Source of the DNA: Marsupella aquatica
Taxonomy: Eukaryota > Plantae > Marchantiophyta
NCBI GenBank assembly: GCA_973895155.1
Contig: OZ316897.1
Location: 9,819,832-9,883,831, forward strand
Direction: 5' to 3'
DNA: 64,000 nucleotides
Shown here: piece by piece, positions 1,114-52,623 of the stretch
How positions within the stretch are numbered: position 1 is the first letter of the stretch
Layout: every line of letters begins with the position of its first letter
Made by a program: the position numbers and the translations under genes
The notes under the pieces: generated by a model
The model's input: only the letters and a program-made list of their open reading frames with translations
The model's database searches: none
What the model was told of the DNA's origin: nothing

Positions 1114-1124
1114 AACTCCCCCTT
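1114..1124 (-). promoter_or_regulatory. Copia polypurine tract
   Basis: Minus strand reads AAGGGGGAGTT directly before the 3' LTR. Confidence 0.85.
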
Positions 1125-1309
1125 AACTCTTGTCTTGGGGACTGGACTAAATGCTACCATATGGAATTTTCAGCGGGAAATTCTAGACAATAACCAAACC
1201 AGGTCTCCCCCTAAAAACCACAAGGGTTAACTAGAACTAAGTTGTAGCCAAACTAGAATGAGTAATCCATATACAAATAGTCACACTTTGCTAAATAACT
1301 CTACTTGCA

Positions 1310-4300
1310 CTACAACTGCAAAACCTGCAAAGTAGCACGATGTCTTGAGAAACTCTCCAAAGGAATCACTTTGGTAAAGGCATCAATGGGATTGAGCTTT
1401 CCATCAATCTTGACTAGCTCAAAAGTTTTATCAGACACTGCTTGCCTGATAAAATGGTACCTGATATCAATGTGCTTCACCCTACTATCCATCACCTGGT
1501 TAGCAGCCAAGTGAAGAGCACTCTGACTATCATAGTTTAGAGTCATTTTGCCATGCTCTAAACCCATCTTCGCGATCAACTTCTCCAACCAAATTGTTTT
1601 CTTTGCTACTTATGCTGCTGCAACATACTCTGCTTCTGTAGTAGACTGAGATATGCACTTTTGCAAGGTAGATTTTCAACTGATACATCCTCCTCCAAGA
1701 GTGTATACAAACCCAGTTGTAGACCTCCTTGTATTCAGACAGCCTCCATAGTCAAAATCTACATAGTCAACTAACGTTCTATCTGATCTGACATCAAATA
1801 GTAATCCATAGTCCTGTATTCCCTTCAAATACATGAGAATCCACTTCACAGCTTCCCAATGTACCTTCCCTAGATTTGACATGAATCTGCTAACCTTGCC
1901 CATTGCTAGGGCCAAGTCAGGCCTAGTACAAGTCATCAAATACATCAGACTGCCTACTGCCTTCTCATAAGGAATCTTAGCCATCAGATCTTTCTCCACA
2001 GCATCCATAGGAGAGAAAGTCGATGATAACTTGAAATGTGAAGCTAAAGGAATACTCACTGGCTTACAGTTCTCCATGTTGAATCGTGCAAGTACTTTCC
2101 TCGCATACTGGCCTTGACTCAAGCACAATTGTCTAGTATCAAAGTTCCTAAAAATCTTCATCCATAAGATCTTCTTGGCCTTACTAAGATCCTTCATCCT
2201 GAATTCAGTACTCAATTTTGCCTTGAGACTGTCAACCTCAGATTGATCTTTAGCCACAATCTCGGGGGTCTCACTACATGGGGACCTCCCCATCACCTGC
2301 GACGTTCTTAGGCCTTGGACACCCTAAAATGCAAGATTTTTTTCAACCCCTATAAAGTTAGAATATTCTTCGAATATTCCAAAAATTGGATTAAAAAGGC
2401 CCTAATGTTCTTATAAGTCTCAAAATTGAATTTAAAAGACCCTATTGTTCTTCTACAAAAATTATTAAGTCTTCCTTTACAACCAATAAAATGACCCTAT
2501 CCTTCGTCGCACGTGATATGCCATTTTTGTGGAAGTGAAACCCCCGAGGCCACAATCAGCATGTCATCCACATAGATCACCAGAATGATGAAACCAAATA
2601 CATCATTCTTGACTGATTTTGTATACACACAAGGATCATACACCATCCTGGCTTGTAAAACCTTGAGCAAGCATGAAATCATCAAACCGCTTGTTCCACT
2701 GTCTGGGAGATTGCTTCAATCCATACAAGGACTTGAGCAATCTGCAAACTAAGTTCTCTTGGCCCTTCTTCATAAAGTCTAGTGGCTGTCTCATGAAGAT
2801 CAACTCTTCCAAGTTGCCATAGAGAAAAGCAGTAACAACATCCATCTGATCCATCACCAGACCAAAAAATACAACAAGCTGACACAATATCCGAATTGTG
2901 GAATACTTAGCCACCGGTGAAAAAACCTCATTATAATCCACTTCTTTCTCCTAAGTGAATCCCTTGGCAACAAGCCTTGTCTTGTAGATCTTATCTCCAC
3001 CCTCTAAAGGACTGTCCTTCAACTTGTAAATCCACTTGCTAACCTCTTGGAAGCTCCACCAGCTCCCATGTCTTGTTGTCACTCAAAGATTGCAACTCCC
3101 TTTACATTGTTGCATTTCACTCATGCTTCTGCTCTGAAGCACAAGCCTTACTATACGAAGAAGACTCTCCTTCTTCCAAGATCAAAGTCATGTCATCTTC
3201 ATCAGGTGCAATGTCACTATCATCTAGCTTACATGAGTCTGCCCATTGACCATACCTAGTAGGAGCTCTAGTAGAACAACTAAAAGTTCTTCTAGTAGAT
3301 GACTCAGGCTGATCTGCTGCTGCTGCTGGCTGATTATGAGGTACCCCAGCAACAATTTGCTCCTCTTGTTCCATCACAGAAACCAGCTCCAAGCCCGGAG
3401 CTTCTCCATCCCTCCTGTCATGAACAACATCATGACTAATCTCCCCCTCAACCCGGTCCGGAATGGGAGATTTCCCCTTGTCAATATGGGAGTCTTGAGA
3501 ACTCTCCCCCTCCTTTGATTATCTGGATTTATTAAATAATACATCTCTACTGATAATTAGTTTACAGGTTACTGGATCCCATAACCTATAACCCTTCACA
3601 CCTTTCTGATAGCCAAGGAAAATGCACTTCTTCGACTTGGACTCCAGCTTGGATCGAAGCTGGGAAGGTGTAAGCACATAAGCATCACATCCAAAAATCC
3701 TCAGATGTGAGTAATCTGCTGGACGCCCATACCTCATTTCAAATAGTATCTTGAATCCAATAGAACTGGATGGAGAAGAATTTACCAAATAAGCTGTAGT
3801 GTTGACAGCTTCAGCCCAAAACTCATGTGGTAAGCATGATTGACTCAACATACTCTTCGAGCGGTCCAATAGTGTTCGGTTGAGTCTGTCATAAATACCA
3901 TTCTGCTGAGGAGTATAACTTGTTATGAGATGGCGGGTAATCCCCTGCTCCTTACAATACGTTTCAAATTCCCCGGAACTGTATTCACCTTCGTTATCCG
4001 ATCGAAGATATCTCACCTTATTACTAGTCTGATTCTCAACTTGGGCTTTCCACTCCTTAAAAGTGGCAAAAACATCATACTTATTGTGTAGAAAGTATAT
4101 CCACACATACCTTGAGTAATCGTCTATGAACGTGACATAGTATAACCGTCCAGAATATGAGGGAGTAAGGCTGGACCCCACACATCACTATGTACATACT
4201 CAAGTATCTCCTTGCTGGTGTGAGTTCCAACTCCAAAGGGTTTCATGTGCTGCTTCCCTAGCACATAGTGCTCATAGAATTCCAACTTACAAGATTGCAA

Positions 4301-5868
4301 ATTAGAAAGTAATCTTTTCTTCTGAAGAATAACCAAACCTTTTTCACTTATGTGGCCCAAATGGAAGTGCTACAGCCGGGCCGTCTCCTCATGAGATAAG
4401 GTTATATTGGCTTCATCACAAACTACACTGCCCTCCAAAACGTATAGATTGTTATATCTCTTTCCCTTCAATACAACTTTAGTACCAGTTGAAACCTGAA
4501 GGACACCATTAGCAGAACTCCACTGATGGCCATTTGCCTCTAAAATTTCAAGTGAAATGAGATTTTTCATCATGTTGGGAATATGTCTCACATTCCTTAA
4601 CGTTCTTACAGCACCATCAAACATCTGAAATCTTACAGATCCAAGTCCAACAACTTGACATTTGATTTCATTTCCCATCAACACTGACCCATTGGAAATC
4701 GTGTAAGAACTGAAAAAATCTCTCCTAGAGCAAATGTGAAAAGTACATGCACTATCTAGAATCCAGTCATCACTACCTGGATTTGACACTACGTTGAGAG
4801 CATAATCTTGGCATCACAATATGTCATCATCATCGAGTAAATCTACCTCATGCGAGCTTGATGCCACGTTAGCAGATGCAGTAGGGACCTTTACTCGACA
4901 ATCCCTTTAAATGTGGTCTGACTTGCCACAATTCCAACATGCAAGAGGCTTCCTCTCTTGCAATTTCCCTCTAGATTTAGATCTCCCCATGATGTAGATC
5001 TAAACCTGTTTTGCCCATTCGTGCGCTGCGCTGCTCTTCCCCTGTTCACATATAGCGCAATGCCAGAAGAAGATGCTGCCTGTGATTGACCCAGCTTCTT
5101 CTGAGCATCATCAGACAGTAAAGAGCTCACCACCTCATTATACAAAATGGACTTCAGATCTATGTACAAGAGCACCTATTTCAAGCCCTAATATGACGGC
5201 GATAAGGAGCTTAGCAGAAGCAAGGCCTTATCCTCATCTTCAACTCCTTTTCCCAGGTTTGACAGATCCACCGCTAGACTGTCAAACTCATCCAGGTGAT
5301 CCTACATCTTGCTCCCTTCCTTGAGCCTGAGGCTCATCAAGAGAGACTTCTTGTACAGCCGGTCTGACACATCTTTCGGATAGTACTTCTCTCTAAGAGC
5401 CTTGAACAGTGACGCGCAATCCGCATAATCATCCAGCTGCTTGATGATGCGCGGCTTGAGATATAGCATCACTGCATTGATAGCAATCACCTGCTCCTAT
5501 CTCTACTGTCTCATAGAAATCTTCTCTTCTCCATCATACTGCTCTCGCAAAGAGAGCAGATGAGCTAAGCCCATGGCCCGAAGGACACCCTTCACTTGCT
5601 TCTCTCACAGCAAGTAATCAGTATGACCATCGTACTTTTCCACCTCAAACTTCACTCCTCCAAATCTAGCCATCTCCCTTTTCTTTCCAACTACCGACAG
5701 CTCTGGTAGTAATACAGCTTTCTCCATTGCATACCGCACCGGTGATCGTACCGGTGTTACAAGTTCCTCCTCAAATGGTAGCAGCTCCTCCTCAGACTCT
5801 CTGTCTGACCGTGGCAATCCTGAAGCTCCACCGACGCCAATTCTTCCAGTATCCTCCAAGTCACTCAT
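1310..5868 (-). pseudogene. Copia gag-pol, broken by stops, frameshifts and a MITE
   Basis: Fragments: gag (KFEVEKYDG), protease (WILDSAC), GAG-pre-integrase/integrase (HSDVWGP, FIDDYSR, LRSDN, WAEAVNT, CIFLGY), RT (QMDVVTAFL, LYGLKQSPRQW, YVDDML), RNase H (RRSTTG, KHIDIRYHFIR). Confidence 0.95.
2261..2548. mobile_element. MITE with 8-bp TSD (hAT-like), copy 1, inserted in the copia RT
   Basis: 15-bp TIR CTCGGGGGT(C/T)TCACT (14/15 match); perfect TSD GCCACAAT at 2253-2260 and 2549-2556; splits RT just after YVDDMLIV. Confidence 0.92.
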
Positions 5869-7474
5869 ATGAAATAATCACAAAAAAATGTATTTTTTCA
5901 AAACTTCTCATAAAACTCAAAACTCAACACCGCCACGTAGCCCACAAAGCTAGGAGTCCAATACTGAAAGCCGAAATCAAAATCAAAATTCAACGGAAAA
6001 ATTATTCAAATTTCGGTCGGGGTGGGTAAAACCTTGGGAAACTCCCCCGTTTTGACCACCTTGGAGAATAACCAAAATACCAAGTGTAACCCGTGTCGGA
6101 TTTGCAATGTGATCGGTGCACCGTGTTGCCAACTTCAATGGCTACGTCATCGCCAAAAAAGAACCAAAAAAGTTACCGTTTGGCGGACAAAATCTTTGTC
6201 GGACGGCCGAAAATAGCTCTCTATTTTTTGGGAATATTCCCGCATAGTCTGACAGGGCTCACAGGGGGCCGTTCCCCCTGTCCAAGCGGTTAAAACGGAG
6301 GGCGGCAGGTCCCGACACAAGGGACAACCAATTAAGGGGGAAAAAGGTAAAAATTGGGCCTTAAAGGGGGTGTTTAAGCCCCTTACTAAGAAATACAGGC
6401 TAGGCACCGTCAAGGGTCAAGGAGGGGGAAATACAGGGGAAATACGCAGGCAGGGTGCGAGCCGGTAGGAAGGGCGCGGGGGTTTGCGAGGGCAGGACCG
6501 ATTAAAGGGAGGGGGGCTGGCGCCGACAGGGCACGAGCCGGAAGGAGGGCGTAGGGGTTAAGGTCGGCCCGCAGCCAAAAAGGCTCGCCAAGAGCCAAGG
6601 GGCGCGCGGGGGTAAAGGGCAGGGCCGGTTGCAGGCGTCCGGTCGCGCTTAGTGCCACTAGTGTAATAACGGGAGTGCGGGGGGGAAGGGCAAATACACG
6701 AGGGAGGGGGGAGTATCGGGAGGGCAGGGTGTGTGTATACACACACCAAACCCAAAAAGACCCCCTTAATGGCAAAAAACTCCCCCGGGGAAAAGGTGAA
6801 TGTTTAACTCACCTAAAAACCGCGGTTTCTCATGAGTAAAGTGATCGCCGCCGACGGGAAAAGTTATCGCATTGCACCGGCACAGTCTGCAACTCCAGTA
6901 GTGTAAACAATTTCCGCCGCGTCGTCTTCACTCCGCATCAAGTGCCAATCCCGGGCTCAAAACGACCGCCTCGCCGCGATCAATCCGTTGAGCCGTAGCA
7001 AATTGTGTTTCTTCCACCGAGTTGGATGTCACAAAGAGAAACCCGGTTCAGATGGGAACAAGCTCCATAGCTTGTGGAAAAACCTGAACGCCTCCTTCAC
7101 TCGTCACGTCACACTTAGTAACAACTCGGCAGCAATTCAGCTACCAAAATGAGCAGCTTGCTTGAAGCTTCAACTTGAGCTATAATGTGCGATCTCTCCC
7201 GCACCGCACAGCTGACACCGTTGAAAAACGCAAACTCTGGTCTCTCCCCCAAAAACCGGTTGAACACGAATAAAACCTGAACGACGCAAGCTTCAAAATG
7301 TCCGCACCACAGATACCGATCAGCAAGTTCTAACCACTATTAGAAAGCCCTCTCACCAAGGTATCCACACAGCCACACACATTCAAGTTTCATGCGACAA
7401 AACTCCGAATGTACCATCGACAATGAACGCTAGAAAAAACCTGTCATGAAAAAACCTTGTCACCTCCTAGGCAT

Positions 7475-7486
7475 GCTCTGATACCA
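7475..7486 (-). promoter_or_regulatory. Copia primer-binding site (tRNA-iMet)
   Basis: Minus strand TGGTATCAGAGC, 2 nt inside the 5' LTR boundary. Confidence 0.93.
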
Positions 7487-7488
7487 CT

Positions 7489-7832
7489 TGTTGAGCATAG
7501 ACGACATCCGTAACGGCAAGCCCATGAACCATCCAACGCACAAGAGTTGACACAAAGAGATACGTGGTTCACCTCCACATGAGGCTACGTCTACTGGAAC
7601 ACATAAGAGCTTTACTGCACGCTAGGCCGATCGGCCATACCAAGCATCCACAGCACAAGTTCTCCCTATCTCTCAACTAGCTCCGTAACAATGAGCCTAA
7701 GTTCTACCAGGGTCTGGCATCAGCCTCGGCTATATACACAACAGCACTACCGCTAACATTAGCTAAGTCCTAACCCAAGTTAGTCTAACTGTAGTTAGCT
7801 CATGAGTCACAAGACTAGAGCAATATCTAACA
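7489..7832 (-). repeat. Copia 5' LTR
   Basis: Direct repeat of 770-1113, adjacent to the PBS. Confidence 0.96.
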
Positions 7833-8351
7833 CTATGGCTATATAATACATGTAACATTCCATATAGTTCATGGAAAATTTTATTTTGTGCATACTTAGT
7901 AGTTGAAAGGTCTTAGAGTCCCTTGGTATTCCTCTACCCATAGTAGTTATGATGTTTCTTATCTTTGCTTGCTACTCCTCTATCCATCGTAGCGAAAGGG
8001 TTTCTTAAGTTACTTTGGTAAATGTTAGAGAAGTTTTTCTTGGGTTTATGATGTAACCTTGGTAAATGTTAGAGCTAGTATTAATTTGAAGAGTTTTTTC
8101 TACTTGTCATTATCTAAAATATGTGGAAATTAAATAGAAAATTGAAACAAAGTACCAGAAAACATTGATATATCTATCAATCACAACTCATCCAAAGATT
8201 TTTTTCACCCCTATTTTACCATTTTCTTTGTTTACTTGAAATGTTATTTTTCAGTTTCCAATGTTTTTATAGTTGCAAGGTCTAATTGATTTTCTTTGCC
8301 TCACGAATAGTCAAATTTGGTTCTTTTTGCGTAACTTACGGTTCTTGTTTG

Positions 8352-8704
8352 TGTCATGCCGAGGGACAGTGCCTCTTGTGCACATCGGCATGTCCCTTGC
8401 ATGCCCGCTAGTATATAGTTAGGGCTAGTGTACTACTTGAGTTAGTGTCATGTTCTTGTAGCGAGTCTGGGCCGTTCTTGAAGCAAAGGTGTTTGTTAGT
8501 GTGACGCCTGGACCCGGTCCTACTTAGGGCATGTGTTTCTTTGCCATTTTTCAGTTCTTCTTGAATCGCTGTGAGACAGAGTTTTTCAGAGGCTGCTCGT
8601 CGGTTCCGTACACGGAATTCACACAGTGATTCGTTAGATGCTCCCGACCGATCTTGTCATCTCGCCGGTTTTCGATTCGATTTCAGTACGTTTGTTTCTA
8701 TCAC
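8352..8704 (+). repeat. Split repeat A1 (353 bp)
   Basis: Matches 16595-16945 with about 8 substitutions and one 2-bp indel. Confidence 0.95.
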
Positions 8705-9285
8705 GCCTTTTATTCAAGAAGAACTGCCGAGTTAGCGGTGATGGGAAGAAGATTGCTCGTGGCAGTTTCGACAATTCTAGGGAAGCCATTGCAATTTCTT
8801 CGACGGACATCGGAGTGACGAGTTAAAAGTTATGGGTTTATGTTGTTATGTGTATACTTAAGTGTATACACATATCAATGCTCCCGAGGAGGTCCGGGGT
8901 TCATTTTCTGGTTGCATCCGCTACCCCTTTGCTCCTTCTTATTGTCACTGCCGCTGGCTGCCTCGATTGCTTTTGGGGTCATTTTTGCATTCCCGGCCAC
9001 GACCGCCGGTGAGCATGCAGCATGTCAGTAGAGGAGCCAAGTCATAGCAGCTCATCACCACCGACACCCAGGTACCACTTGCGGAGTGATCCACAACCGT
9101 TGGTGCCAATTTCATTGGAGTCTCGACAATTTTGACGACGTCAGCAGACAGCAGCAGCACCCACACCACGCAATCCTTCTGCTACATTTGGCGGTCGCTT
9201 CACCACTACCCCGAAGCCTGCTATCGCTTCTCTGCCCTTTACTCCTTTTGCATCAGTGATTGTTCCAGCTTCACCAACATACAGC

Positions 9286-10872
9286 ATGGATGCCAGTCAC
9301 TCATTTGGCCGCATTGAGCGCTTCAGTGGGCGGCCAGGCACTGTTTCTTTGCGTGAGTTCAAATCCACTTTCTACACTATCGTTTACGAATTGGAGTTGA
9401 AGTATGGCAGCAACTTCACAAATGCTTTTGCATTTAAGCAGCTAGCCAGGTATGTGCACCACGAGGCTTTGGATGTGTATGAGTAGCATTCTCAATGGCT
9501 GCTTGTTGTCACACAATTGCCTAACCCTGCCTATGCCACTGCAATTGCGGCTGCCTCACAACTGGCATTACAGAATGCCATTGCAGCCCATGCTGCTACT
9601 CCTGCCACTTCCCCTCCTACTCCAATTCCCACCACTGCACCAGTTACTCCCACTATCTTGGCACAGGCTACATCAGGCATTTCTCCCACCATTGATTCCC
9701 CTGCCTTTGCTGATCCAGTGGCTGAGTTTTTCCAGGTTCTTGAATTGGAATTCCCAATCAAGAGTGCTGACAAAATCATGCAGTTGGCCACCTTTGTGAG
9801 GCAACGCGATGAAACATTGAAGATGCTGTATCGCCGGCTTCTCAAGCTGAAGGAAGACACCCAGAGCATCACTGACCTGGAAGCTGCTCATCGCTATCTT
9901 CGCGTATTGGAGGGCACACCAGCTCTCCATTCGCAAGTGTTGCAGCAAGTATTCTCAGATTTTGGAGACAACTACACCCTGCTCAATGTCTATGACACTG
10001 CTGAGAAACTTGAGTTGGCCCATGCATATTATGAGGCCAGTATTGCGCATCCACCGCGATCCAGGTACCAGGCTGCTGCCCCTACACTGACCACCCCTTC
10101 TCGTGTGCCACAGTATGGTTCCAAGACCAAGCCAGCACATGCTGCTTTCATGCTGCCATCTTGCAACTACTGTGGTAACCCCAATCACAAGGCTAATGAA
10201 TATGATATTGTTGCTGAGGACCTGTCTTGTGATTTTTGCAGAAAAGTGGGCCACTTGGTGGCAGTTTGTTTTGCCAAATTCCCAGAGAGGAAGCAGCTAC
10301 GACAGCAGAGCCTTCATCCTACTCCTGCTTCCACTCCCCCACCAGCTAGGAGGGCTCCTACTGCATCAATTGCTCCTCCTTCCAGTGGCAAAGCATCCAG
10401 TGCTAACAAATTGCCCAAGCAGCAACAGAAGCAACCAGCTCAGAAGGAGGCTCACAACGCACAGGCAACTCAACTCCAGTCTCTGACTCATGAGGTTGAG
10501 TCCTTACGTGCCCAACTTGCCAACATCAAAGGCAAGTCCACTGCCTCTGCTAGTCCTTCTCAACCGACTGGTCACGTGCAACCCATCCCTGGCCCAGGCA
10601 CCACTGACAGTTTAGCACCTCTACCCTGCTCTTTCTATGGCTTGCCATTTGATGATGCTCATATGGGTGAGTGTGTGCTGTCCTCTGCTACACAGCCTGG
10701 CCTTACAACAGAATTTTCAGATTCATTCTGCCCTTCCTATTTTGCTTACCAGCAGGCCAGTGCTGCCTCCCGTATTGCTCCCACACGCCGCATTGTACAG
10801 GCTAATGGTCTTGCTGCTGGTCCTATGACTAGAGCCAGGGGAGCTCGGGCTGTCATGCCCCAATCTTTTTAG
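9286..10872 (+). pseudogene. gag of the gypsy-type element
   Basis: ORFs 9256-9486 and 9517-10872 are in the same frame, separated by one TAG; two zinc knuckles, CNYCGNPNHKANEY (degenerate) and CDFCRKVGHLVAVC. Confidence 0.85.
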
Positions 10873-12125
10873 CCACTCACACTTGCTGAAGAGCGCACCT
10901 TGTTGGCGAGGGGGGAGCAAGCTGTAGCTTCCACCACCAGGTGCTGCTGACATTTCACAGGGAGTTGTTTTTCCTGAGCTGCTTGAGCATTTCACCTCCG
11001 GTATGGCACAAAGGATTCTTACCACTCCACTTTTCAGTTGCCATGATTTACAGCTGGATGCTAGAGCTGTCATCACAGCTAGAGGGCTCACTACATTCTT
11101 CATCAGCCCCTGTGACACCGGTTTTGGAGGTCCAATCTCATGTATATACTGGACCTTCTTCTTCTCCATTGCATGCTTCCACTGGTTTGGCTATCCCAGT
11201 ACCGATTTCCAGTGCTAGAGATGACAGTATTGCTGCAGATTGTGTGACCAGAGTTACACTTGATTCTGGTCATGCTGCTTCATCGTTCCTGGCTATGCTG
11301 TTGAGTGGGAAGACCGTGGACACTAACTCCCTTCACAAGGTACCTCATCATTTGCCAAAAGTGGTGCCTAGTGACAGGACTTTAGTTTCCACCACCATTG
11401 CCATTGTTGACAACAGGAATTCAGCAGTCAAGTTGGAGGGTCACACTCCTCAGGTGGTCATGCTAGACACAGGCGCTCAACCAGTAATCTTGGGCATTCA
11501 GTTTGCCAAGAAGATGGGACTGCTGACTGATCATTTACAGCAATCCAGGTGGCACATTCGGACTGCTAGTGGCACTGTGGAGGATGTGTTGGGTGAGAGT
11601 TCTACTTTACTCACTCTCACTTTTAATGGAGGTACAGATCAGGAACTGCATTTCCCAGTCAGATGTTTGGTTACCAATGCCACTACGTATGATGTGCTCA
11701 TTGGCCAGGAGGCTTTGTTCCCACCAGGTTTTACCATTGACAACTGGCATGAGCATGCATACTACAGAGTTGATTGGCATACGGATGGCTCACACTTGGG
11801 ATACATTCCACTTGATTTGCATGGTGCCCATACCCCTATGGCTCACCACTGTGTGTTGAAAGCAGTGCACACAGCTACCTATGTCAACCACCCATTGCAG
11901 GATTGGATTGAGGAGGATGATGATGAGGTGGCTATTGCACATGCTGCTGCACATATAGCAGCACTTTCCAGCAACGTGGATCATCAACCAGAGGTGGTAC
12001 AACGGCTCCAAGCAGCCCATGGACCTTTGGTGGCTGCATTGCACAAATTTGAGGACCTTGGGCAGCATAATGGACAACCAATAGCCCCAATCTTGAGCGC
12101 ACCAGTTACATGGACTCCTCCTTCA

Positions 12126-13050
12126 GATGGCCTTACATTGCTTGAGCTTTTTGGTGGCATTTCTACAGGCCTGGAAGCTCTTCTAAAGTCTGGCATGGTG
12201 GTGAAGCAGTACATCTATGTGGATATTGATCCAAGTGCAAGGCAAGTGGCTGAATCCCGTCTGCTGGAATTTTCAGAGCGATTTCCCCAGCAGTTTCCAC
12301 ATAGTGCATGGAAGTCTGCATTTTCTTTCTTCCCTCCAGATATCCAGCTTGTCCAGCACCGACACTTAACCCTTCTTGGCTTCCTTGATTTGATCATAGC
12401 TGGTTGGGAATGCCAAGGGTTTTCAGCTGCTGGTCACGGTGCTGGACTGCATGATTCTTGTTCTGGCCTTTTCACAGCATTGGTTCAGATTCTCACTTGG
12501 CCTCAATCCCTTTATCCTGCTGTTGGTTATATCATTGAGAATACTCCATCTCAGTTTGACCAGCGTCCACAGGTCAAAGAGGATTTCAGTGTGGTCCAGC
12601 ACTACTTGGGACCACCCCTTCTCATTGATGCAGTGCACTGTGGTTCTTATGCACATTGTCTTCGTAACTTTTGGACTAACCTTGCACCACCTTCCTTGCT
12701 GGAGATGGCTCTTCACCACACATCCAGGGACACTAACCTTACAGTGGACCAGATTTTGGATCCTGACAGTTCTTGCCAACTAGTTACACGGCAAGAGCCA
12801 GCCAATACCAAGGTGCTAGCTTGGCCTACATTTGTGTTCTTTCCAGGTGCACATGCTTTTCAGGGTGATGGTCCTGGCCTGGTTTATCGACATTCTACCG
12901 GTACATGGGATGAACCTAGTCCTGAGGAGAGAGAACGGGCTATGGGCTTCCAACCCGGTACTACAGGTCACACCAAAATCACCAAGCTGGCCAGGAATGC
13001 TTTACTTGGCAAGGTAATGGATCTCAATGCTCTCACTTGGCTTCTGGTCA
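12126..13050 (+). CDS. C5-cytosine DNA methyltransferase domain (DNMT3-like) inside pol
   Basis: Motifs in canonical order: I LELFGGIS, II YVDID, IV DLIIAGWECQGFS (Cys codon 12411), VI IIENT, VIII AH(C)LRNFWTNL, IX EERERAMGF, X RNALLGK. Confidence 0.92.
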
Positions 13051-16000
13051 CTTGCATCCTTTTTCAGATGTACATTCCTCCAGCATTAGGGGCTCCAGCC
13101 CTACCACTCCACAGTGCTGCTGCATGGCATCCAGACTAGGTGCACTTACCTCTATCCAACACTCACCACTTCAGTCCAAGTGTTGGGGGGGAGGAGGTCC
13201 CTTGTAATGCGGCTGACATTATTTCTGAGTTTCATGGTGTGGACCACTTCAGATCAGCAAGTACAACAGGCCTTGGAGAGGCCTCATCACCTTATCAGCA
13301 GCATGCTAGCAGCTTGGACAGTGGAGAGGCTGACACTTCTGGCTCTTCAAGCACGAGTACATCAGGTCCTATTCCTAGTGTTGCCAACTACACATTTATC
13401 ATGGGCAACCACCTGAGTAAAAGACAAAAGGACCAGCTGCTGAATTTGCTCCTCAAGCATGAGAATGTGTTTGCTTTCTCTATGAAGGACTTGGGTAAGT
13501 GCAAGACTATGCAGTTCTCCATTGAGTTGGCTGATGAAACACCTATCTTTAGGCGGAGACACTGTTTGAGTAAGCATGAGTGGCAGCTGGTGGATGAGAG
13601 GTGCCAAGAGCTTTATGAAGCTGGTCTTATTCAGCCATCTACATCAGATTTTGCGGCAGCTACAGTGATGCCAGCAAAGAAGGATTCCAGTGGATTGTGG
13701 ACAGAGAAGCGCATGTGTGGGGACTACAGGCCATTGAACCTGGTCACACCCCAAGACAGGTACCCCATCCCGCGGCCAAAGGAGCTATTTGACAGCATTG
13801 GAGACTCAGACATCTTCACTCTTGTGGATCTAAGGCAAGGCTTCAACCAGATTTTGCTGCTTGCAAAAGACTGCAAGAAAACAGCTTTCCATGGTAGTAA
13901 CCAACTATGGGAGTGGTTGGTGATGCCATTTGGCTTGAAGAATGCGCCCATATTCTTTCAAAGAGTCATGGACCAGGTTCTGCAAGGTGCTGAGTTTCTG
14001 AAATGCTACATTGATGATGTGTTGGTCCACAGCAAAGGATTTGACCAGCATCTACTTGACCTTGAGGAGCTATTCATGAGGCTTAAGAAGGTGAACCTAA
14101 AGATACACCCCAAGAAGTGTGAATTTGCTGTCAGATCAGTAGTATATCTTGGGCATCGCATTCTTCCAAATGGAACCATGGCTCACTGGGCCAAGGTGGT
14201 ATCCATCTTGGAAATGCCCACTCCTACCGATGTTCACACTTTGAGGAGTTTTATTGGGTTGTGCAATTACTACCGGATCTACATCAAAGATTTCAGTACC
14301 ATTGCACACCCATTGTATGCTTTGTTGAAAAAGAATGTGACTTGGACATGGAGTACAGATGCTGAGGCAGCATTTGCCACTTTGAAGGAGAAGCTCTCAG
14401 AATACCCGGTGCTGAGAAGACCTGATTTCAGCAAGGTCTTTGTGCTACACACAGATTGGAGTGCCCTTGGGATTGGTGCCATTCTGGGCCAGCATGATGA
14501 GGAAGGTAAAGAGTACGTCATTGCCTATGCATCCAGGAGCAACAATCAGGCAGAGAGTCATTATTCTTCTTATGAGGGTGAATGCCTTGCTGTTGTGTGG
14601 GCTGTAATACATTACAGGCCCTACCTCTTTGGGACCAGGTTTGTTCTCTACACTGACCACCAGCCCTTGAAGTGGTTGATGACCAACGACAAGCTTACTG
14701 GCAAGCTTGCTTGTTGGGCACTCATACTCCAGGAGTATGATTTTGAGGTAATTCATAGGCCTAGTGTGACACATCAAAATGCTGACACTATGTCCCGCAA
14801 CCCTTTGATTGCCTCTGATGATCCCTCAGATGCACGGCAGGATTTTGACCAGGTTTCCATCCTGCCTACATTTCATGCATCTACCTATCTTGCTTTGCTG
14901 CCATGCTACATCGTTGACCAACCTGTGGTGGACATATGGGAGGACAGTGACACTCTGAGATTTTTGCAGCATGGGGAGTACCCCATACATGTTACTGCAA
15001 CCCAGAGAGACCAAATTCAGCAAAGGTCCAAGCGTTACTTGTGGAAGGGAGATCATCTCGTGTGCTGCTTGCCAGACAGGGAAGTGGTGGTTCCACCCAT
15101 TCATGAGAGGGTTGGCCTTATCCGTAAGGTACATTCTGAGCTTGGTCATTTTGGCGTTAAGAGGACTTACAACCTCTTGGTCCCTCATTATCATTGGAGA
15201 GGCATGCATGGCCAGGTTCAAGATGTTATTGCCCGGTGTGAACAATGTGATAGGGTGAGGACTTCTTTCACATCTCGGCAACCCACACTTCATCCACTCC
15301 CTATTCAGGGCATGTTTTATCGTTGGTCATGTGATTTGGCTGGAGAATTACCCCTCACGTCTCGGGGTAATCTCTACATCATGATCATGATAGAGCATTT
15401 CTCCAAGTGGATAGAACTTGTGGCATTGCCGGATAAGACCTCCCGTAGCACCAGCCAGGCATTCCTACAACAAGTTCTCAGCCGCTTTGGAGCTTGTGCA
15501 AAATGTCTCACTGACCAGGGATCAGAGTTCAGAGGAGAGTTCCAGGAGCTGCTTGATCAGGCCCTCATTGATCATCGCTGAACGTCACGAGATCACCCAC
15601 AAGCAGATGCTTGGCAGAGCGCATGGTTCAGACATGCAAGAAGGGTCTCCGGAAGATCTGCCTCACCAAAAATAAGGAGGATTGGGACCTGGCCTTACCC
15701 TACATTGCCATGGGGTATAGGATGTCCAGACATGCATCACTGTCTAACTTTTCTCCCTACTTCTTGTTGTTTGGTCGTCACCCAGTTCCACCTTCTGCTA
15801 TTGCTGCTCACATGCTTCAGGTGGTGGACTTGGATTCAGCTGTGACTTGGTCTGATGTGATCTCTGAGAGGGCTGCCCTATTCAGGAGGGTTATGCCCAT
15901 GGCCATGGAGAATTTGGCCATTGCACAGCATAGGGACACACTACATTATGCACACACACGAGGGGGCACTTTTCAGCCCAAGGTCAGGAAGTTTGATGTA

Positions 16001-16225
16001 GGAGATTTTGTGTACTTGCAGCGGCAAGCTAACGACACCCTGGACACCTCTACTAGTCGTACTATTCTCAGGGTTAAAGCTATTCGACCGTCTGGAGTGC
16101 TAGAGTTACAAGGGGCAGATGGGCGCACAATTGCTGACAATGCCAAGAATTGCGCCCCTTGTCATCTGCCTAACCTGGATCCCACCATTGTGACTTCTAC
16201 CTGGATTCCACCTATGGACTACCCT

Positions 16226-16377
16226 TGCAAAGTGTGTTTGCGAATTGATGATGCTGACCAGATGCTGCTGTGTGATAATTGCAATGGAGGGTACCATCTT
16301 TCTGCCTTCGGCCTGAACTTACCCAGGTGCCAGAAGGGTTATGGTTTTGCCCTTCCTCTGCTCCACGTGCTACCTGA
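16226..16377 (+). CDS. PHD finger at the integrase C-terminus (frameshifted)
   Basis: CKVC-x4-DADQMLLCDNCNGGYH, then after a 1-nt shift FCLRPELTQVPEGLWFCPSS; C4HC3 pattern with the last Cys read as Ser (TCT). Confidence 0.88.
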
Positions 16378-16416
16378 CTTTTCTTCAGCCCTCCTTTTAG
16401 CTGTGGTCTGGGGGGG

Positions 16417-16592
16417 ATACAGAGGTTTACACCTCCACTACGTACATACCACCTCAGTTGCTTTTTCTTGGCACTTGTGAATGTGATTGGACTTTTTCTA
16501 AGGATGTTGGTTGCTAGCAGCTTGCACATATGCATTGTTGGTGACTTGTATGTTTTCGATACACTATGGCTACGATACTATATGTCACGACA
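16417..16592 (+). repeat. Split repeat B1 (176 bp), preceded by a G7 polypurine tract at 16410-16416
   Basis: Matches 16965-17140 with 3 substitutions. Confidence 0.95.
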
Positions 16593-16594
16593 GC

Positions 16595-16945
16595 TGTCAT
16601 GCTGAGGGACAGTGCCTCTTGTGCACATCGGCATGTCCCTCGCATGCCCGCTAGTATATAGTTAGGGCTAGTGTACTACTTGAGTTAGTGTCATGTTCTT
16701 GTAGCGAGTCTGGGCCGTTTGAAGCAAAGGTATTTGTTAGTGTGACGCCTGGACCCGGTCCTACTTAGGGCATGTTTTTCTTTGCCATTTTTCAGTTCTT
16801 CTTGAATCGCTGTGAGACAGAGTTTTTCAGAGGCTGCTCGTCGGTTTCATACACGGAATTCACACAGTGATTCGTTAGATGCTCCCGGCCGATCTTGGCA
16901 TCTCGCCGGTTTTCGATTCGATTTCAGTACGTTTGTTTCTATCAC
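16595..16945 (+). repeat. Split repeat A2 (351 bp)
   Basis: Copy of 8352-8704, separated from B1 by the dinucleotide GC. Confidence 0.95.
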
Positions 16946-16964
16946 CTCAAAAAAAATAAAAAAA

Positions 16965-17140
16965 ATATAGAGGTTTACACCTCCACTACGTACATACCAC
17001 CTCAGTTGCTTTTTCTTGGCACTTGTGAATGTGATTGGACTTTTTCTAAGGATGTTGGTTGCTAGCAGCTTGCACATATGCATTGCCGGTGACTTGTATG
17101 TTTTCGATACACTATGGCTACGATACTATATGTCACGACA
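16965..17140 (+). repeat. Split repeat B2 (176 bp), element 3' terminus
   Basis: Copy of B1; preceded by a CTC plus A-tract linker; followed by TSD TTTG. Confidence 0.95.
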
Positions 17141-18764
17141 TTTGTGACAAATCATGCTGATGTGGATGCATGTACAACTAGGAATTTTGGAAGGAACTTC
17201 CCATGAGGGTCCGTAATTACAAGTCATAAACCTAGCAAGAGCTGACTACACTCCATTAAGTTTTCTAGGAGTCACAAGCTTGGAAGTGTCTCCATCCACA
17301 CCTTTAAGCTTGGAAGGGATGCCAAAATGCTCTTCAATTGTATGAATGTGAAGACTTCCTTCCCTAACTCTTGTACGCTAGTTAAAATGCATGTTTTCCA
17401 TAGATCCCATGCAAGTTTAGGATCCTAACCAAGCAAAATATTTAGGATTGAGATCTGATCAGAGCTTCTGGCATGTTTCCATTGAGAGCACATAGATCTA
17501 ATGACAGCACCCTGTTTTCAAACTAGTGAGGGCTCTGGACACGCTGAAGTTCCATCCGGAGTCCCATCCATCATTTAGGGAAACATCTGCTGAATCTCTT
17601 TACAGTTTTCAATGGACTCTCATTGCAAAACCTTGTAACAAAAATAGTTGACAATTCCAGATTCTCAGGTAGGTGCTTTTTGTGGTGTTTTCATTCACCA
17701 AAACTGAGTAAAGGGGCATCATGATTTCAGCAGTTCAATTGTAAGTTGTTTCGTCTACCAACGAAGGGGCCAACAAATAGTTCCACAAAAGAATTGTCGA
17801 ATAAAGAATTGACTATTTGAACATCCTGGGCAACAGGTGAAACAGCCACAAGAAGGCTCATATTACCAAATGTCAAGCTCTTCAAGAATAAACAAAGGTG
17901 AAAGCACATCTGTAGATTTCAGATGCCAATATCAAAGCCCCATTCCCAGGCACCTTGCTCCCACTCATTCCTGCCCTGTGGTGAATAGTGTACTCACTAT
18001 AAAATGTGCAACCCAAACCCACTCCTAGTGCAGTTTATAATGAGCTATGGGTTATCCATAGCTGTTAGCGGACTGGTCAAGCTGTGGCTTAAGAGTAAAC
18101 AATAGGGTTTGTAAAAGCACAGCTGTAATTGGGTTGTGGCTCAAGACATAAAACTGTGTTGCGGCCAGGACAAAATCAGTATGGGCTACCAAATTACTTA
18201 CCCCATGAGGGTGATACATCCAAACAATTAACTCCTATAATACAAGGTTGTGCCAATTTTTACAGTGGTCGTCATTCAAATTTGCAGGGCACAAAAAATA
18301 AGAAATCTGGTAGAAGGAAAGAATAAAGACAAAATAAATTTTGCTTAGTGTGAATGAAAAAGAGGCACACCAATGTCCAAGTAGGAGAGAATCAAATGGG
18401 ATAAGCAAACAAAAAAAGGGGAGTCACTAACACAATGAACAAGGATCAAGGAGGATACTCACTCCATGACAAGCTAGGAGGATTGTACATACTGAATAAG
18501 GTATACATACTCACTAGAATGAAATAGTGCCTAATTTAGTGTAATATTGGTAGGAGTTAAATTTAAGATACTATTTCAGTCAATAAGGGACTACATACAC
18601 TAATCAAAATAAAACATTATTCTCCCAATATTTAGAGTGATTTTTTACATTCATTTTTTGTGCCATTTTCACTGCCCAAAAAACAAAAGTTATAAGGTCC
18701 AAAGACATAGTAAAGATCATGGCCCTGGCGTTGATGGCAAGGTGTCAAGCAAGGGGCACAATTT

Positions 18765-24371: not shown

Positions 24372-26242
24372 ATTGTCGATCGTAACGTGTAGAAGGGATT
24401 TATCAATAAAACTCCAAGGCATTGAGCTGCCAGAAATAGGAAAGCACATTCAAAATAAAAGTGCGTATGACATTGATCAGTTGATTCCGGGGTTGAATAG
24501 AGAACTACTGTCTGCATCCATACACAAGACAAGTAGTTTCAATCATGTGATCAATTCTATCAAATAATATCGAACTGTCGATCGAAGTACATATCGGAGC
24601 ACTCTTCCCCTGCTAATGTTAGGTGGCTCTCTTGTAAGATGTAGAGACCTGGAGTGATATGCATTCTTCATCATCAACTCAGACTGGGCGCTTTGCAGTG
24701 TTTCCTTGCTTTGCACATTTGCTACCCAGTACCTTGCAAAAAGTTCAACGAGGTTTTTATTAAGTATTAGTGACTCATTCATCAAAATCAACAGTCAGAT
24801 ATCCAGATCTGAAAGTATATAGATCCTATGGTTGTAATATGAATGTGCAAGTAAATTGCATAATTTTTGCTAAGGGGAGGCTTCTGAACTTGCCATAAAA
24901 GCCACCTGCCGGAAACTCTTCTGCGTAGTAGCACGGTTATCTCTTTACTGGCTTAGGCAATGATTTATCTTGGCATTATGCTAAACATGAAAGGTTTGAA
25001 TGGCAATCTTGATGGCCACAAATGAGACATTCAAATTTTCTTGGATGGTGCATTTTACAGTGTTGTCTCCAAGATGATGTGGAAACTTGAAGTTAACCAC
25101 TACTAAGGTTGATGCTTGAATGGACCAATAAACCCTGACTGACATAAATGAATTGTTTATTCACTTGCATAACATGTTTTACACTTCTGATCCCAAGATT
25201 AGACATTATCATGGATCTGACAGATAATAGAAGGTTTTCAGTGGATTTCTCTGATTGCTTTGGTATTCTGTTGATGTGAAAGCCTCTTTAGCTGAAGGAG
25301 TTGAGTTCTCTTGGTTATTGTGTATAGACTGTAAGAAACCGGACGTCTCACACTAGACAGCACATAAGCAGAACATGAGAGTGCACTCAATCACACACTA
25401 AATTGTCAAGACACCATGATAGAAACACTCTTGAAGGATCTATAGCATGAGAGAACACATGAATATGAAGAATGAGAAAGAGAAAGAGAATGTTTAGGAT
25501 GAGCTTTCTGCCTCAATCATTACAGGGTATGTGTAGAGACAATTGGGCATGTCAAAGCACTGGCATAAACAAGGTCTCATGGTTGTAATTAATTAGCCAT
25601 AAACCACAACTTAACTTGTCTTTACAAACATTCACTTTTTGGATGTCTCCACTTTATAGGGCACCTTTCTAGGTATCTTGTAATGTTTTTTTGCCCTGGC
25701 CAAAAAAGCATTTTATGTCCTTGGCCATAACTCACTTCCATAAGTCACTTACATCCCTGCTTTGACACACCCTAATGTCAATTAATGTAATGCATCCCAA
25801 CGGTTGTTGTCGCTGGACTATGGTTGTGCTCTGTTCTCAGCAAGAGGGCTTATCAACATATGACTACTCACATGGGCAATTGTCCTTTGGTCTCATTTCA
25901 AATATGAGTTCTATTGCTTGCCATCCAAAAGCGTTTCTATTTGTTGCAAGGTGAACATCAATGTTCCAATAGCTTCAGGTGACTTCTGTTTCAGCTCCTA
26001 TGACATAATTTTGATGCTTTCAACTGTTGAAAGATCAAGCCTGAGATAAACCCCCTTGAGACACATCATTACTTCCAAAAAGAGTCTTTGGTGAATTCCA
26101 ATTAGAGGCATGGGACAAGGATCACTGCTCAAACGCCTCTTTGCAGGTGGTGCTGATTACACACTTCGTGGTTCAATTAAAGTCTTCACACAATCTACTA
26201 GCTCTATGGATAATTGAATGGACCGACAACGCTTATGTCATA

Positions 26243-26697: not shown

Positions 26698-26743
26698 TTG
26701 AACGATCTATCTGAAGCTTCACCTCAACTGAGATGTACAGCAC

Positions 26744-52587: not shown

Positions 52588-52623
<36 letters not shown>

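What the first reader, a model, noticed from the sequence alone, without database searches (positions are those of the whole stretch)
8352..17140. DDE-integrase Ty3/gypsy element with split direct repeats instead of LTRs: candidate new retrotransposon replication type
Seen: the order is A1 (8352-8704) - gag/pol - G7 tract - B1 (16417-16592) - GC - A2 (16595-16945) - A-tract - B2 (16965-17140). The two ends of the element are different sequences, yet they form TG...CA termini and are flanked by a clean 4-bp TSD (TTTG). Known: A-...-B-A-B split direct repeats characterise Ngaro/PAT tyrosine-recombinase retrotransposons, which are thought to integrate circular cDNA, whereas Ty3/gypsy DDE elements have two equivalent LTRs. 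This element encodes an rve-type integrase and I see no tyrosine recombinase. Inference: it behaves like a two-repeat circle (repeat unit = B+A) opened at an attachment site inside one repeat, which would be a DIRS-like circular route finished by a DDE integrase. I do not know a described family with this combination, but I could not check the literature or databases.
Basis: partly seen in the sequence, partly recalled or inferred. Interest (0 to 1): 0.93.

Follow-up and report, generated by a model that had tools for sequence, protein, structure and literature searches.

The report
Ty3/gypsy retrotransposon with permuted LTRs
This is a dead bryophyte copy of a little-studied plant/algal Ty3/gypsy retrotransposon family (Gypsy-DNMT3) whose integrase cuts at a palindrome inside the long terminal repeat instead of at its ends, so every inserted copy carries a joined end-to-end LTR junction.

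Summary
It is a family trait, not a one-off. The same order occurs in about 30 independent copies from ten lineages (liverworts, a moss-like metagenome family, Klebsormidium, Closterium). Ten of 14 complete copies have perfect, different 4-bp duplications.

All verified members form one pol clade, and all nine related lineages tested carry a Dnmt3-like domain. Two outgroups have ordinary LTRs.

The combination is already in print, in one sentence: de Mendoza et al. 2018 (KnitGypsy-Dnmt3, "repeats as in DIRS, domains as in Gypsy"). No mechanism was given there.

My reading is that reverse transcription is ordinary LTR-type:
- The polypurine tract abuts B.
- A Tf1-like self-priming site abuts A and covaries between families.
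- The RT-defined LTR is therefore B-GC-A.

The integrase ends lie inside that LTR, at a conserved palindrome (GACA·GC·TGTC). A2|B2 is then the joined cDNA ends. That junction has indels in 12 of 23 copies, against 0 of 45 control boundaries.

A DIRS-like route is not supported. One fact is unexplained: the mirror form (A-B-A-int-B) was never seen (0 of 21). The window copy is dead, with two stops and two frameshifts.

The parts
8348..8351 (+). Left copy of the 4-bp target-site duplication (TTTG)
   Evidence: Relatives have different perfect 4-bp duplications at the same boundaries.
8352..8704 (+). A1: the 5' repeat, starting TGTCATG (left integrase end). Inferred make-up: the promoter-bearing part of U3 (positions 1-200) plus R-U5 (from 201).
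   Evidence: 97.2% identical to A2. The TGTC start is conserved in 10 lineages.
8552..8566 (+). CAGTTCTTCTTGAAT: putative self-primer, i.e. the start of R, inside A1 (the A2 copy lies at 16793-16807)
   Evidence: Perfect 15-nt reverse complement of 8712-8726. Equivalent pairs with different sequences occur in L002, L003, L004, L088 and many family-M copies.
8712..8726 (+). ATTCAAGAAGAACTG: putative Tf1-type self-priming PBS, 7 nt after A1
   Evidence: In relatives it directly abuts or overlaps the end of A. No TGG/tRNA-type PBS is visible.
9517..10872 (+). Gag-like ORF (451 aa, no Pfam match). The start codon is only the mechanical ORF start.
   Evidence: Its position matches the gag region upstream of protease in related loci.
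10941..13139 (+). Pol part 1: aspartic protease (about 11427-11717) and a Dnmt3-like cytosine methyltransferase (about 12129-13070). It ends at an in-frame stop at 13137-13139, where relatives read through.
   Evidence: Pfam PF13975 plus a weak PF00145 hit. DNMT3A chains are the only PDB matches. 66% identity to the DNMT part of P0006. Motifs read LFGGIS, ECQGFS, IENT and ERERAMGF.
13140..15581 (+). Pol part 2, same frame as part 1: RT (about 13701-14162), RNase H (about 14349-14738), integrase zinc domain (about 15096-15263) and the start of the rve core (from about 15318). It is cut by a stop at 15579-15581.
   Evidence: Pfam. 81% identity to Calypogeia fissa proteins. The stop is seen.
15611..16377 (+). 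Rest of the integrase core (including LAERM, which carries the third catalytic residue), the C-terminal region and a PHD finger. It is reached only through a frameshift near 15609, and a second frameshift lies near 16298 inside the PHD finger.
   Evidence: 84% identity to P0001 residues 675-904. PF00628. Sequence read.
16410..16416 (+). G7 run: the 3' end of the polypurine tract, directly abutting B1
   Evidence: A G-run abuts the first base of B1 in all 21 family-M copies and in every other lineage.
16417..16592 (+). B1: the first part of the RT-defined LTR (U3 start), ending CACGACA
   Evidence: 98.3% identical to B2.
16589..16598 (.). Internal att palindrome GACA-GC-TGTC. It is the right integrase end and the left integrase end placed back to back, with 2 nt (GC, 16593-16594) between CA and TG.
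   Evidence: It is conserved in all 10 lineages although A and B otherwise cannot be aligned. The spacer is 2 nt in every copy read; the one indel in this core (L071) is a 1-nt deletion inside the B end.
16595..16945 (+). A2: the second part of the 3' RT-defined LTR
16946..16964 (+). 19-nt A-rich filler (contains AATAAA) at the A2|B2 junction. The last 7 nt that precede the PBS in A1 (GCCTTTT) are missing here.
   Evidence: Relatives usually have a direct A|B junction, with small copy-specific indels.
16965..17140 (+). B2: terminal copy of B, supplying the right integrase end (…CACGACA)
17141..17144 (+). Right copy of the target-site duplication (TTTG)

Best explanation
The element is a dead bryophyte member of the streptophyte Gypsy-DNMT3 clade of Ty3/gypsy retrotransposons. 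Its 'split direct repeats' are a circularly permuted LTR.

Inferred cycle:
1. Transcription starts inside A1, near the self-primer site.
2. The minus strand is self-primed, as in Tf1, at the PBS next to A. The plus strand is primed at the G-run next to B.
3. The ordinary strand transfers give a linear cDNA with the LTR B-GC-A at both ends.
4. The integrase does not use these termini. Its two recognition ends (…CACGACA and TGTCATG…) lie back to back inside the LTR as the palindrome CA|GC|TG.
5. The two cDNA termini (end of A, start of B) become joined. This could be by ligation into a 2-LTR circle, by a further template switch, or by host end joining after strand transfer.
6. The integrase cuts the palindrome of the PBS-proximal LTR with a 2-nt stagger.
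7. The two CA-3'OH ends are inserted with a 4-bp stagger.

The result is A–internal–B-GC-A|B.

Shown here: the layout, the duplications, the positions of the primer sites, the conserved palindrome, the variable A|B junction and the clade distribution.

Inferred: the order of joining and cutting, who does the joining, and the transcript ends.
For: Family-wide layout:
- Canonical copies occur in L001-L007, L088 and L090 (the L006 and L007 copies are incomplete or rearranged, see Tried and rejected), and in 21 independent metagenome copies.
- Perfect 4-bp duplications, all different, are TTTG, GGTC, AGTG, GTCA, TTTA, ATGT, CCAA, TGTG, AATG and TCAT. The chance of this is about 1e-21.

RT-defined borders:
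- A G-run abuts the first base of B1 in every copy.
- The sequence right after A1 is the reverse complement of an internal A site. The pair covaries between families: 15 nt in the window, AATTCTAGAAAAACT in family M, CACTTCAGAACT in L003, CTTAGAGAACT in L004 and CATACAAGCAAAAAG in L088.
- The fresh Closterium copy L088 has A1=A2 at 511/511 and B1=B2 at 165/165. L003 and L004 have B1=B2 at 100%. Each repeat pair is therefore copied from one template per cycle.

A2|B2 behaves as joined cDNA ends:
- It is precise in about half of copies. Ten of 21 have indels of -3 to +6 nt exactly at the junction, and some are extra PBS bases.
- Two further copies have large deletions anchored at the junction (L014, L047).
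- Control boundaries show none: 0/21 at PPT|B1 and 0/24 at A1|PBS. Fisher p = 2e-7.
- The window's own junction lacks 7 nt and has gained 19 nt.

Internal att:
- (C)GACA-GC-TGTC is conserved in ten lineages, down to 40% pol identity.
- The spacer is always 2 nt.

Precedent: the PFV and HIV-1 integrases cleave the palindromic LTR-LTR junction of 2-LTR circles (PMC1180852, PMC1905944).

Clade: all eight verified pols that are in the tree fall in one clade with support 100. Outgroups L089 and L091-L093 have ordinary LTRs.
Against: - No extrachromosomal DNA or RNA ends were observed. The transcript start, the poly(A) site and the joined intermediate are all inferred.
- A symmetric 2-LTR circle should be opened at either palindrome. 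The mirror product A|B-GC-A-int-B was never seen: 0 of about 25 readable 5' ends, 0 against 21 canonical copies, p = 1e-6. An unexplained polarity must therefore exist.
- About 11-13 copies are 'minimal' A-int-B. They could be B1xB2 recombinants or direct products of another path.
- In the window the PBS lies 7 nt beyond the A1/A2 homology, and the filler carries AATAAA. This could mean that transcripts end in B2.
- Cleavage of an internal palindrome has not been shown for any Ty3/gypsy integrase.
- The junction sequence is AT-rich, so some of its indels could be ordinary slippage.
Confidence: 0.6

Rival explanations
1. DIRS/Ngaro-like route. Genomic RNA runs from inside A1 to inside B2. The internal B1-A2 junction serves as a template or bridge to rebuild the missing ends and close a circle with two B-A units. 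A DDE integrase then opens that circle.
For: - The repeat order is exactly that of Ngaro/PAT elements (PMC5890265 makes the same comparison).
- This route would explain the strict polarity, with no mirror forms seen.
- AATAAA in the window's filler just before B2 is compatible with transcripts ending in B2.
Against: - No tyrosine recombinase is present.
- RT, RNase H and integrase are Ty3/gypsy-type.
- The B border coincides with a polypurine tract and the A border with a covarying self-priming PBS. A bridging model gives no reason for either.
- The stretches that would be present twice in such an RNA are identical in fresh copies.
- The A2|B2 junction varies from copy to copy, whereas transcribed control borders do not.
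Confidence: 0.15
2. Same permuted-LTR logic, but no free circle. Either the integrase cuts the palindrome on the linear cDNA, inserts both half-sites and host end joining then seals the two distal cDNA termini. Or the plus strand makes a third, end-to-end template switch from the end of A onto the start of B before the integrase cuts.
For: - The junction spectrum (small deletions, 1-6 nt additions, a 19-nt filler, one microhomology deletion) fits plant-type end joining or non-templated addition by RT.
- An ordered process could give the observed polarity. The palindrome on the plus-strand strong-stop duplex, which ends up PBS-proximal, is the first to become double-stranded. This is inference.
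Against: Nothing in the sequences separates this from a circle intermediate, and the polarity argument is only kinetic reasoning. This is a variant of the best explanation, not a contradiction of it.
Confidence: 0.25
3. The locus is a one-off: a rearrangement, an autointegration product, a nested or tandem insertion, or a misassembly of an element with ordinary LTRs.
For: - Only one copy is present in the window.
- Such repeats do trouble assemblers: the Marchantia locus L006 has an N gap exactly between A2 and B2.
Against: - About 30 independent copies in ten lineages and several assemblies have the same order, each with its own 4-bp duplication.
- No copy with B-A at both ends or A-B at both ends was found.
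Confidence: 0.01

Closest known systems
KnitGypsy-Dnmt3 / streptophyte Gypsy-DNMT3 (de Mendoza et al. 2018, PMC5890265; named 'Gypsy-DNMT3' in bioRxiv 10.64898/2026.05.21.726589)
   Same: - Ty3/gypsy Pol with an embedded Dnmt3-like domain.
- A…B-A-B repeats, which the 2018 paper describes as 'the same as that of a DIRS retrotransposon'.
- The window pol is 45-51% identical to K. nitens proteins and lies in the same clade.
- The K. nitens locus L005 shows G-run-B-GC-A-B.
   Different: - The host is a bryophyte, not a charophyte alga.
- A C-terminal PHD finger is present.
- The published note gives no mechanism, termini, duplications, primer sites or distribution. Those are worked out here.
Ngaro / PAT / DIRS tyrosine-recombinase retrotransposons
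   Same: The order of split direct repeats is A1–internal–B1-A2-B2. Some of these families also carry a DNA methyltransferase.
   Different: - They encode a tyrosine recombinase and make no target duplication.
- Their RT belongs to another lineage.
- Here there is a DDE integrase, a 4-bp duplication, a polypurine tract and a PBS at the repeat borders.
Tf1 / sushi-type self-priming Ty3/gypsy elements
   Same: A PBS next to U5 is complementary to the start of R of the same RNA (11-15 nt here). No tRNA-type PBS is present. The comparison with Tf1 is from my own knowledge of that family.
   Different: Tf1 has two ordinary LTRs and integrates by its cDNA termini. Priming in the present clade is inferred from covariation only.
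Cleavage of the palindromic LTR-LTR junction of 2-LTR circles by retroviral integrases (PFV, HIV-1; PMC1180852, PMC1905944, PMC4372172)
   Same: A DDE integrase cuts both strands at CA within a palindrome formed by the two viral ends, and this yields 3'-processed ends.
   Different: - In retroviruses the palindrome is created by joining the cDNA termini, and the circle route is at most a side path.
- Here the palindrome is a fixed internal part of the LTR with a 2-nt spacer.
- Here the joined termini persist in every integrated copy as A2|B2.

Membership tests
Ty3/gypsy (Metaviridae) LTR retrotransposons | Pol order protease-RT-RNase H-integrase, with an H2C2 zinc domain and a DDE (rve) core | tested here: met
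   Pfam hits in that order. The third catalytic region LAERM lies after the frameshift. Homologues are Ty3/gypsy-type.
Ty3/gypsy (Metaviridae) LTR retrotransposons | TG…CA termini with a short inverted repeat, and a 4-6 bp target duplication | tested here: met
   TGTCATG…CACGACA with TTTG on both sides. Ten perfect 4-bp duplications across relatives.
Ty3/gypsy (Metaviridae) LTR retrotransposons | Two equivalent LTRs at the two ends of the integrated copy | tested here: not met
   The ends are A and B, which are unrelated sequences. The full unit occurs once internally (B1-GC-A2) and once in permuted form (A2|B2).
Ty3/gypsy (Metaviridae) LTR retrotransposons | A polypurine tract and a PBS flanking the repeat unit | tested here: met
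   A G-run abuts B1. A self-complementary PBS abuts or follows A1. Together they define the unit B-GC-A.
DIRS / Ngaro / PAT retrotransposons | Tyrosine recombinase ORF | tested here: not met
   No PF00589 or similar hit in any ORF of 80 aa or more on either strand.
DIRS / Ngaro / PAT retrotransposons | Split direct repeats A1…B1-A2-B2 | tested here: met
DIRS / Ngaro / PAT retrotransposons | Insertion without a target-site duplication | tested here: not met
   4-bp duplications are present in the window and in relatives.
Streptophyte Gypsy-DNMT3 (KnitGypsy-Dnmt3) | Dnmt3-like domain inside the Gypsy Pol | tested here: met
   Weak PF00145 hit. DNMT3A chains are the only PDB matches. 66% identity to the DNMT part of P0006. 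The domain is present in all 9 related ingroup loci tested and absent from both outgroups.
Streptophyte Gypsy-DNMT3 (KnitGypsy-Dnmt3) | DIRS-type repeat order combined with Gypsy domains | tested here: met
   Stated for K. nitens in the Fig. 4c legend of PMC5890265. Seen in K. nitens locus L005 and in the window.
Streptophyte Gypsy-DNMT3 (KnitGypsy-Dnmt3) | Pol in one clade with the K. nitens elements | tested here: met
   A 61-row clade with support 100 holds the window, the K. nitens proteins P0041/P0034/P0062, and the Closterium, Marchantia and Calypogeia proteins (FastTree only).
Tf1/sushi-type self-priming elements | PBS complementary to the 5' part of R of the same transcript | tested here: met
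   11-15 nt complements that covary between families. Shuffle p = 0.000 in 13 of the 24 loci listed, 11 of which have complements of 12-15 nt.
Tf1/sushi-type self-priming elements | RNase H cleavage of the folded 5' end, and priming from it | not testable with these tools
   This needs RNA and cDNA end mapping or biochemistry.

The most novel reading that the evidence does not exclude
A whole, ancient clade of DDE-integrase LTR retrotransposons obligatorily integrates from an end-joined (LTR-LTR junction-containing) cDNA. It does so by cutting a fixed internal CAGCTG palindrome, with a built-in polarity that always opens the PBS-proximal LTR.

This would be a natural system in which the old 'circle junction as att site' model is the normal route.

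The embedded Dnmt3 co-occurs with this architecture in all nine related lineages tested, and the palindrome is two overlapping CHG sites. The Dnmt3 might therefore take part, for example by marking or protecting one att copy. That link is pure speculation.
Probability: 0.45. Interest if true: 0.85.

Novelty: new member of a known kind. Interest (0 to 1): 0.66.

Why it matters
Textbook LTR retrotransposons and retroviruses integrate a linear cDNA by its termini. 2-LTR circles are treated as dead ends, and their use as integration precursors has been argued since the 1980s.

In this clade the integrated copy itself preserves a joined cDNA-end junction. The integrase ends sit inside the LTR. The end-joined route therefore appears to be the productive one, and has been for as long as Klebsormidium, Closterium and liverworts have shared the family.

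That makes the question testable in culturable algae that hold fresh copies.

There are also practical consequences:
- LTR finders that expect two equal terminal repeats will mis-annotate these elements.
- Assemblers can break at A|B, as in the Marchantia gap.
- The 'minimal' A-int-B and solo A-B derivatives will be missed or misclassified in bryophyte and charophyte genomes.

The window locus itself is an ordinary dead copy. Its value is as an entry point to the family.

Tried and rejected
- **tRNA-type PBS.** No TGG… follows A1 in the window or in relatives. It is replaced by the self-priming complement.
- **LTR = A+filler+B with a truncated 5' LTR.** Rejected. Nothing resembling B follows A1, and the PPT and PBS sit at the wrong borders for that reading.
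- **Integration by the RT-defined termini.** No copy has B-A upstream of pol.
- **Mirror form A|B-GC-A-int-B.** Searched for by motif scan and by BLAST with the L002 A and B pieces. None was found in about 25 readable 5' ends.
- **Windowed gap counts along the B-A-B alignment.** Not informative, because subfamily insertions dominate. Replaced by direct reading of three boundaries.
- **L045.** An apparent A-end/PBS-like stretch after B turned out to be chance. Its flanks are an unrelated local repeat.
- **L006 (Marchantia).** It cannot be used for the duplication or the junction because of an N gap.
- **L007 (Closterium).** Rearranged.
- **L005 (K. nitens).** It lacks A1.
- **TOC1 of Chlamydomonas.** It is now classed as a non-autonomous DIRS element (PMC9940879), so it is not a relative.
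- **Collections not used.** The phage, plasmid, E. coli and bacterial genome collections hold nothing relevant to a plant retrotransposon.

Full report
**1.

The repeat search and direct reading confirm the layout:
- A1 is at 8352-8704 and A2 at 16595-16945, 97.2% identical.
- B1 is at 16417-16592 and B2 at 16965-17140, 98.3% identical.
- A G7 run (16410-16416) abuts B1.
- Exactly GC lies between B1 and A2.
- A 19-nt A-rich filler (16946-16964) lies between A2 and B2.
- The termini are TGTCATG…CACGACA.
- TTTG flanks both sides (8348-8351 and 17141-17144).

A and B occur nowhere else in the window. The coding region carries a gag-like ORF, protease, RT, RNase H, integrase (H2C2 plus rve) and a PHD finger. 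No tyrosine recombinase appears in any ORF of 80 aa or more on either strand.

The evidence is a weak PF00145 hit, DNMT3A chains as the only PDB matches, and 66% identity to the DNMT part of P0006. The motifs are LFGGIS, ECQGFS, IENT and ERERAMGF.

The copy is dead. It has in-frame stops at 13137-13139 and 15579-15581 and frameshifts near 15609 and 16298.

**2. It is a family trait**

The pol piece is 81% identical to proteins of the liverwort Calypogeia fissa. It also matches Marchantia, Klebsormidium and Closterium proteins, many with DNA_methylase and PHD domains.

I fetched the DNA around such proteins and ran one metagenome scan. The same order (A – internal – G-run – B – 2 nt – A – B) appears in:
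- C. fissa: L001, L003, L004
- a bryophyte-like metagenome family, 'family M', with L002 plus 20 further independent copies after removing duplicates
- Klebsormidium nitens: L005
- Marchantia: L006, where an N gap lies between A2 and B2
- Closterium: L007 (rearranged) and L088
- partly in L090

L088 is a fresh copy, with A1=A2 at 511/511 and B1=B2 at 165/165.

Perfect 4-bp duplications flank TG…CA in ten complete copies: TTTG, GGTC, AGTG, GTCA, TTTA, ATGT, CCAA, TGTG, AATG and TCAT. Three more copies match at 3 of 4 positions. The chance probability is about 1e-21.

In a FastTree of 103 pol sequences, all eight verified split-repeat elements included in the tree fall in one 61-row clade with support 100. 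Two outgroup lineages have ordinary LTRs: L089 (194 bp, with a TGG-type PBS) and L091-L093 (1.1 kb).

The Dnmt3-like domain is present in all nine related ingroup loci tested and absent from both outgroups. The PHD finger is missing in Closterium.

**3. It is not undescribed**

de Mendoza et al. 2018 describe KnitGypsy-Dnmt3 of K. nitens. The legend of their Fig. [quoted passage not shown] A 2026 preprint refers to 'streptophytes (Gypsy-DNMT3)'.

In the searchable library, the element's name (KnitGypsy) occurs only in the 2018 paper, and my keyword searches turned up no study of termini, duplications, priming sites or mechanism.

**4. What the repeats are**

Two borders are set by reverse transcription.

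- *The start of B.* It lies directly after a G-run in every copy of every lineage. None of 21 family-M copies has an indel at that border.
- *The end of A.* It abuts a sequence that is the reverse complement of a site inside A. The pair changes together between families:
  - window: ATTCAAGAAGAACTG with CAGTTCTTCTTGAAT
  - family M: AATTCTAGAAAAACT with AGTTTTTCTAGAATT
  - L003: CACTTCAGAACT
  - L004: CTTAGAGAACT
  - L088: CATACAAGCAAAAAG

This is the signature of Tf1-type self-priming, as I know it from that family. Priming itself was not tested here.

The unit that ordinary strand transfers would place at both cDNA ends is therefore B-GC-A. Consistent with that, both repeat pairs are identical over their whole length in fresh copies.

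The other two borders, the start of A and the end of B, are the integrase ends. They carry TG and CA, form a 6/7 inverted repeat and are flanked by the duplication. Inside the unit they sit back to back as (C)GACA-GC-TGTC.

This palindrome is conserved in all ten lineages, although A and B otherwise cannot be aligned between them. The spacer is always 2 nt. Cutting after CA on both strands would leave 3'-OH ends with 2-nt 5' overhangs, which is the normal processed integrase substrate.

**5. A2|B2 is a joint of cDNA ends made anew at each insertion**

It joins the last base before the PBS to the first base after the polypurine tract. Among 21 independent family-M copies:
- about half are exact
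- ten have -3 to +6 nt exactly at the joint, including one or two extra bases that match the PBS (L041, L042, L008)
- two further copies have large deletions anchored at the joint: L014 keeps only the last 29 nt of B2 and still has a perfect duplication (CCAC), and L047 joins A position 78 to the start of B through a TACA microhomology

The same sequences at the A1|PBS border (0/24) and the PPT|B1 border (0/21) show no such indels. Fisher p = 2e-7.

The window's own joint lacks the 7 nt that precede the PBS in A1 and has a 19-nt A-rich filler.

This pattern is what circle junctions or end-joined DNA look like. It is not what an inherited, transcribed segment looks like.

**6. Most likely mechanism (inference)**

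Ordinary self-primed LTR-type reverse transcription yields B-GC-A … B-GC-A. The two termini become joined. The integrase cuts the palindrome of the PBS-proximal unit and inserts the ends. This gives A-int-B-GC-A|B.

PFV and HIV-1 integrases are known to cut the palindromic junction of 2-LTR circles (PMC1180852, PMC1905944).

I cannot tell who does the joining. It could be host ligation into a circle, host repair after strand transfer, or a further end-to-end template switch by RT. I also cannot tell whether joining or cutting comes first.

**7. What does not fit**

- *Polarity.* A symmetric circle could be opened at either palindrome, yet the mirror product A|B-GC-A-int-B was never seen. There were none among about 25 readable 5' ends and none against 21 canonical copies, p = 1e-6. 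One possible cause is that the palindrome on the plus-strand strong-stop duplex, which ends up PBS-proximal, becomes double-stranded long before the other. This is only reasoning.
- *Minimal forms.* About 11-13 copies are 'minimal' A-int-B. Some have a duplication: L037 has ATAT, and L020 and L051 match at 3 of 4 positions. They may be B1xB2 recombinants, or products of cutting both palindromes.
- *The window's AATAAA filler.* It leaves open that some transcripts end in B2.

**8. Rivals**

- The DIRS-like route explains the polarity. It does not explain why the repeat borders coincide with primer sites, why the repeats are identical in fresh copies, or why the junction varies.
- A one-off rearrangement or misassembly is excluded by the number of independent copies.

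**9. Verdict**

The locus is a dead copy of a known but barely characterised family, so it is a new member of a known kind. Its claim of an undescribed type and of a DIRS-like route is not.

The family deserves attention. Its integrated copies preserve an LTR-LTR joint, and its integrase sites are internal. That makes the long-debated use of end-joined retroviral-type DNA for integration directly testable.

**Surroundings**

The window is TE-rich plant DNA. It holds:
- a Ty1/copia element at 770-7832 on the minus strand
- a G-patch ORF
- CACTA-type transposase ORFs next to a SET-domain ORF
- two tandem-repeat arrays

The pol similarity (81% to Calypogeia fissa) suggests a bryophyte host, probably a liverwort; this was not tested with host genes. 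Nothing suggests human DNA.

Noticed in passing
window 770-7832 (minus strand): A Ty1/copia LTR retrotransposon with 344-bp LTRs (770-1113 and 7489-7832, 94% identical) and ORFs with RVT_2, rve and SH3_retrovirus domains. It ends about 520 bp upstream of the studied element.
   Followed up: partly
window 58078-62436 (minus strand): CACTA/EnSpm-type transposase ORFs (Transposase_21, DUF4218, DUF4216) lie next to an ORF with a SET domain (61525-62436). This may be a transposon that has captured a SET domain.
   Followed up: no
window 52467-53594 (minus strand): A 376-aa ORF with a G-patch domain. It is the only non-transposon protein domain found among the long ORFs of the window.
   Followed up: no
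window 26242-26699 and 48534-48699: Two tandem repeat arrays, with units of about 106-116 bp (several copies) and 83 bp (two copies). Their nature is unknown.
   Followed up: no
L013, L020, L023, L031, L033, L037, L045, L051, L065, L083 (also L012, L070): 'Minimal' copies A-internal-B with no A2 or B2. Some have a target duplication (L037 ATAT). They are either B1xB2 recombinants or direct products of cutting both palindromes.
   Followed up: partly
L014:13700-13760 and L047:4690-4800: Large deletions anchored exactly at the A2|B2 joint. L014 keeps only the last 29 nt of B2 yet has a perfect duplication (CCAC). L047 joins A position 78 to the start of B at a TACA microhomology.
   Followed up: yes
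L001:3805-4381 (reverse strand): A solo A-B unit, 99% identical to A2-B2 of the neighbouring element, but with no matching 4-bp duplication (GAGT versus ATTC). Solo A pieces with no B next to them also occur in L036, L041/L084 and L063.
   Followed up: partly
L006:16048-22037: The Marchantia polymorpha assembly has a run of N exactly between A2 and B2. This suggests that the A|B-repeat structure breaks assemblies.
   Followed up: no
window 12129-13070; L001-L007, L088, L090: The Dnmt3-like domain co-occurs with the split-repeat layout in all nine related ingroup loci tested and is absent from both outgroups. Its motif IV reads ECQ instead of PCQ. The att palindrome CAGCTG is two overlapping CHG sites. 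Any functional link is untested.
   Followed up: partly
L007:10715-17133: In this Closterium copy the 3' internal part, B and the first 55 nt of A are duplicated 4.8 kb apart. The sequences flanking the whole structure resemble each other (80%). It is a rearranged or nested locus that I did not resolve.
   Followed up: no
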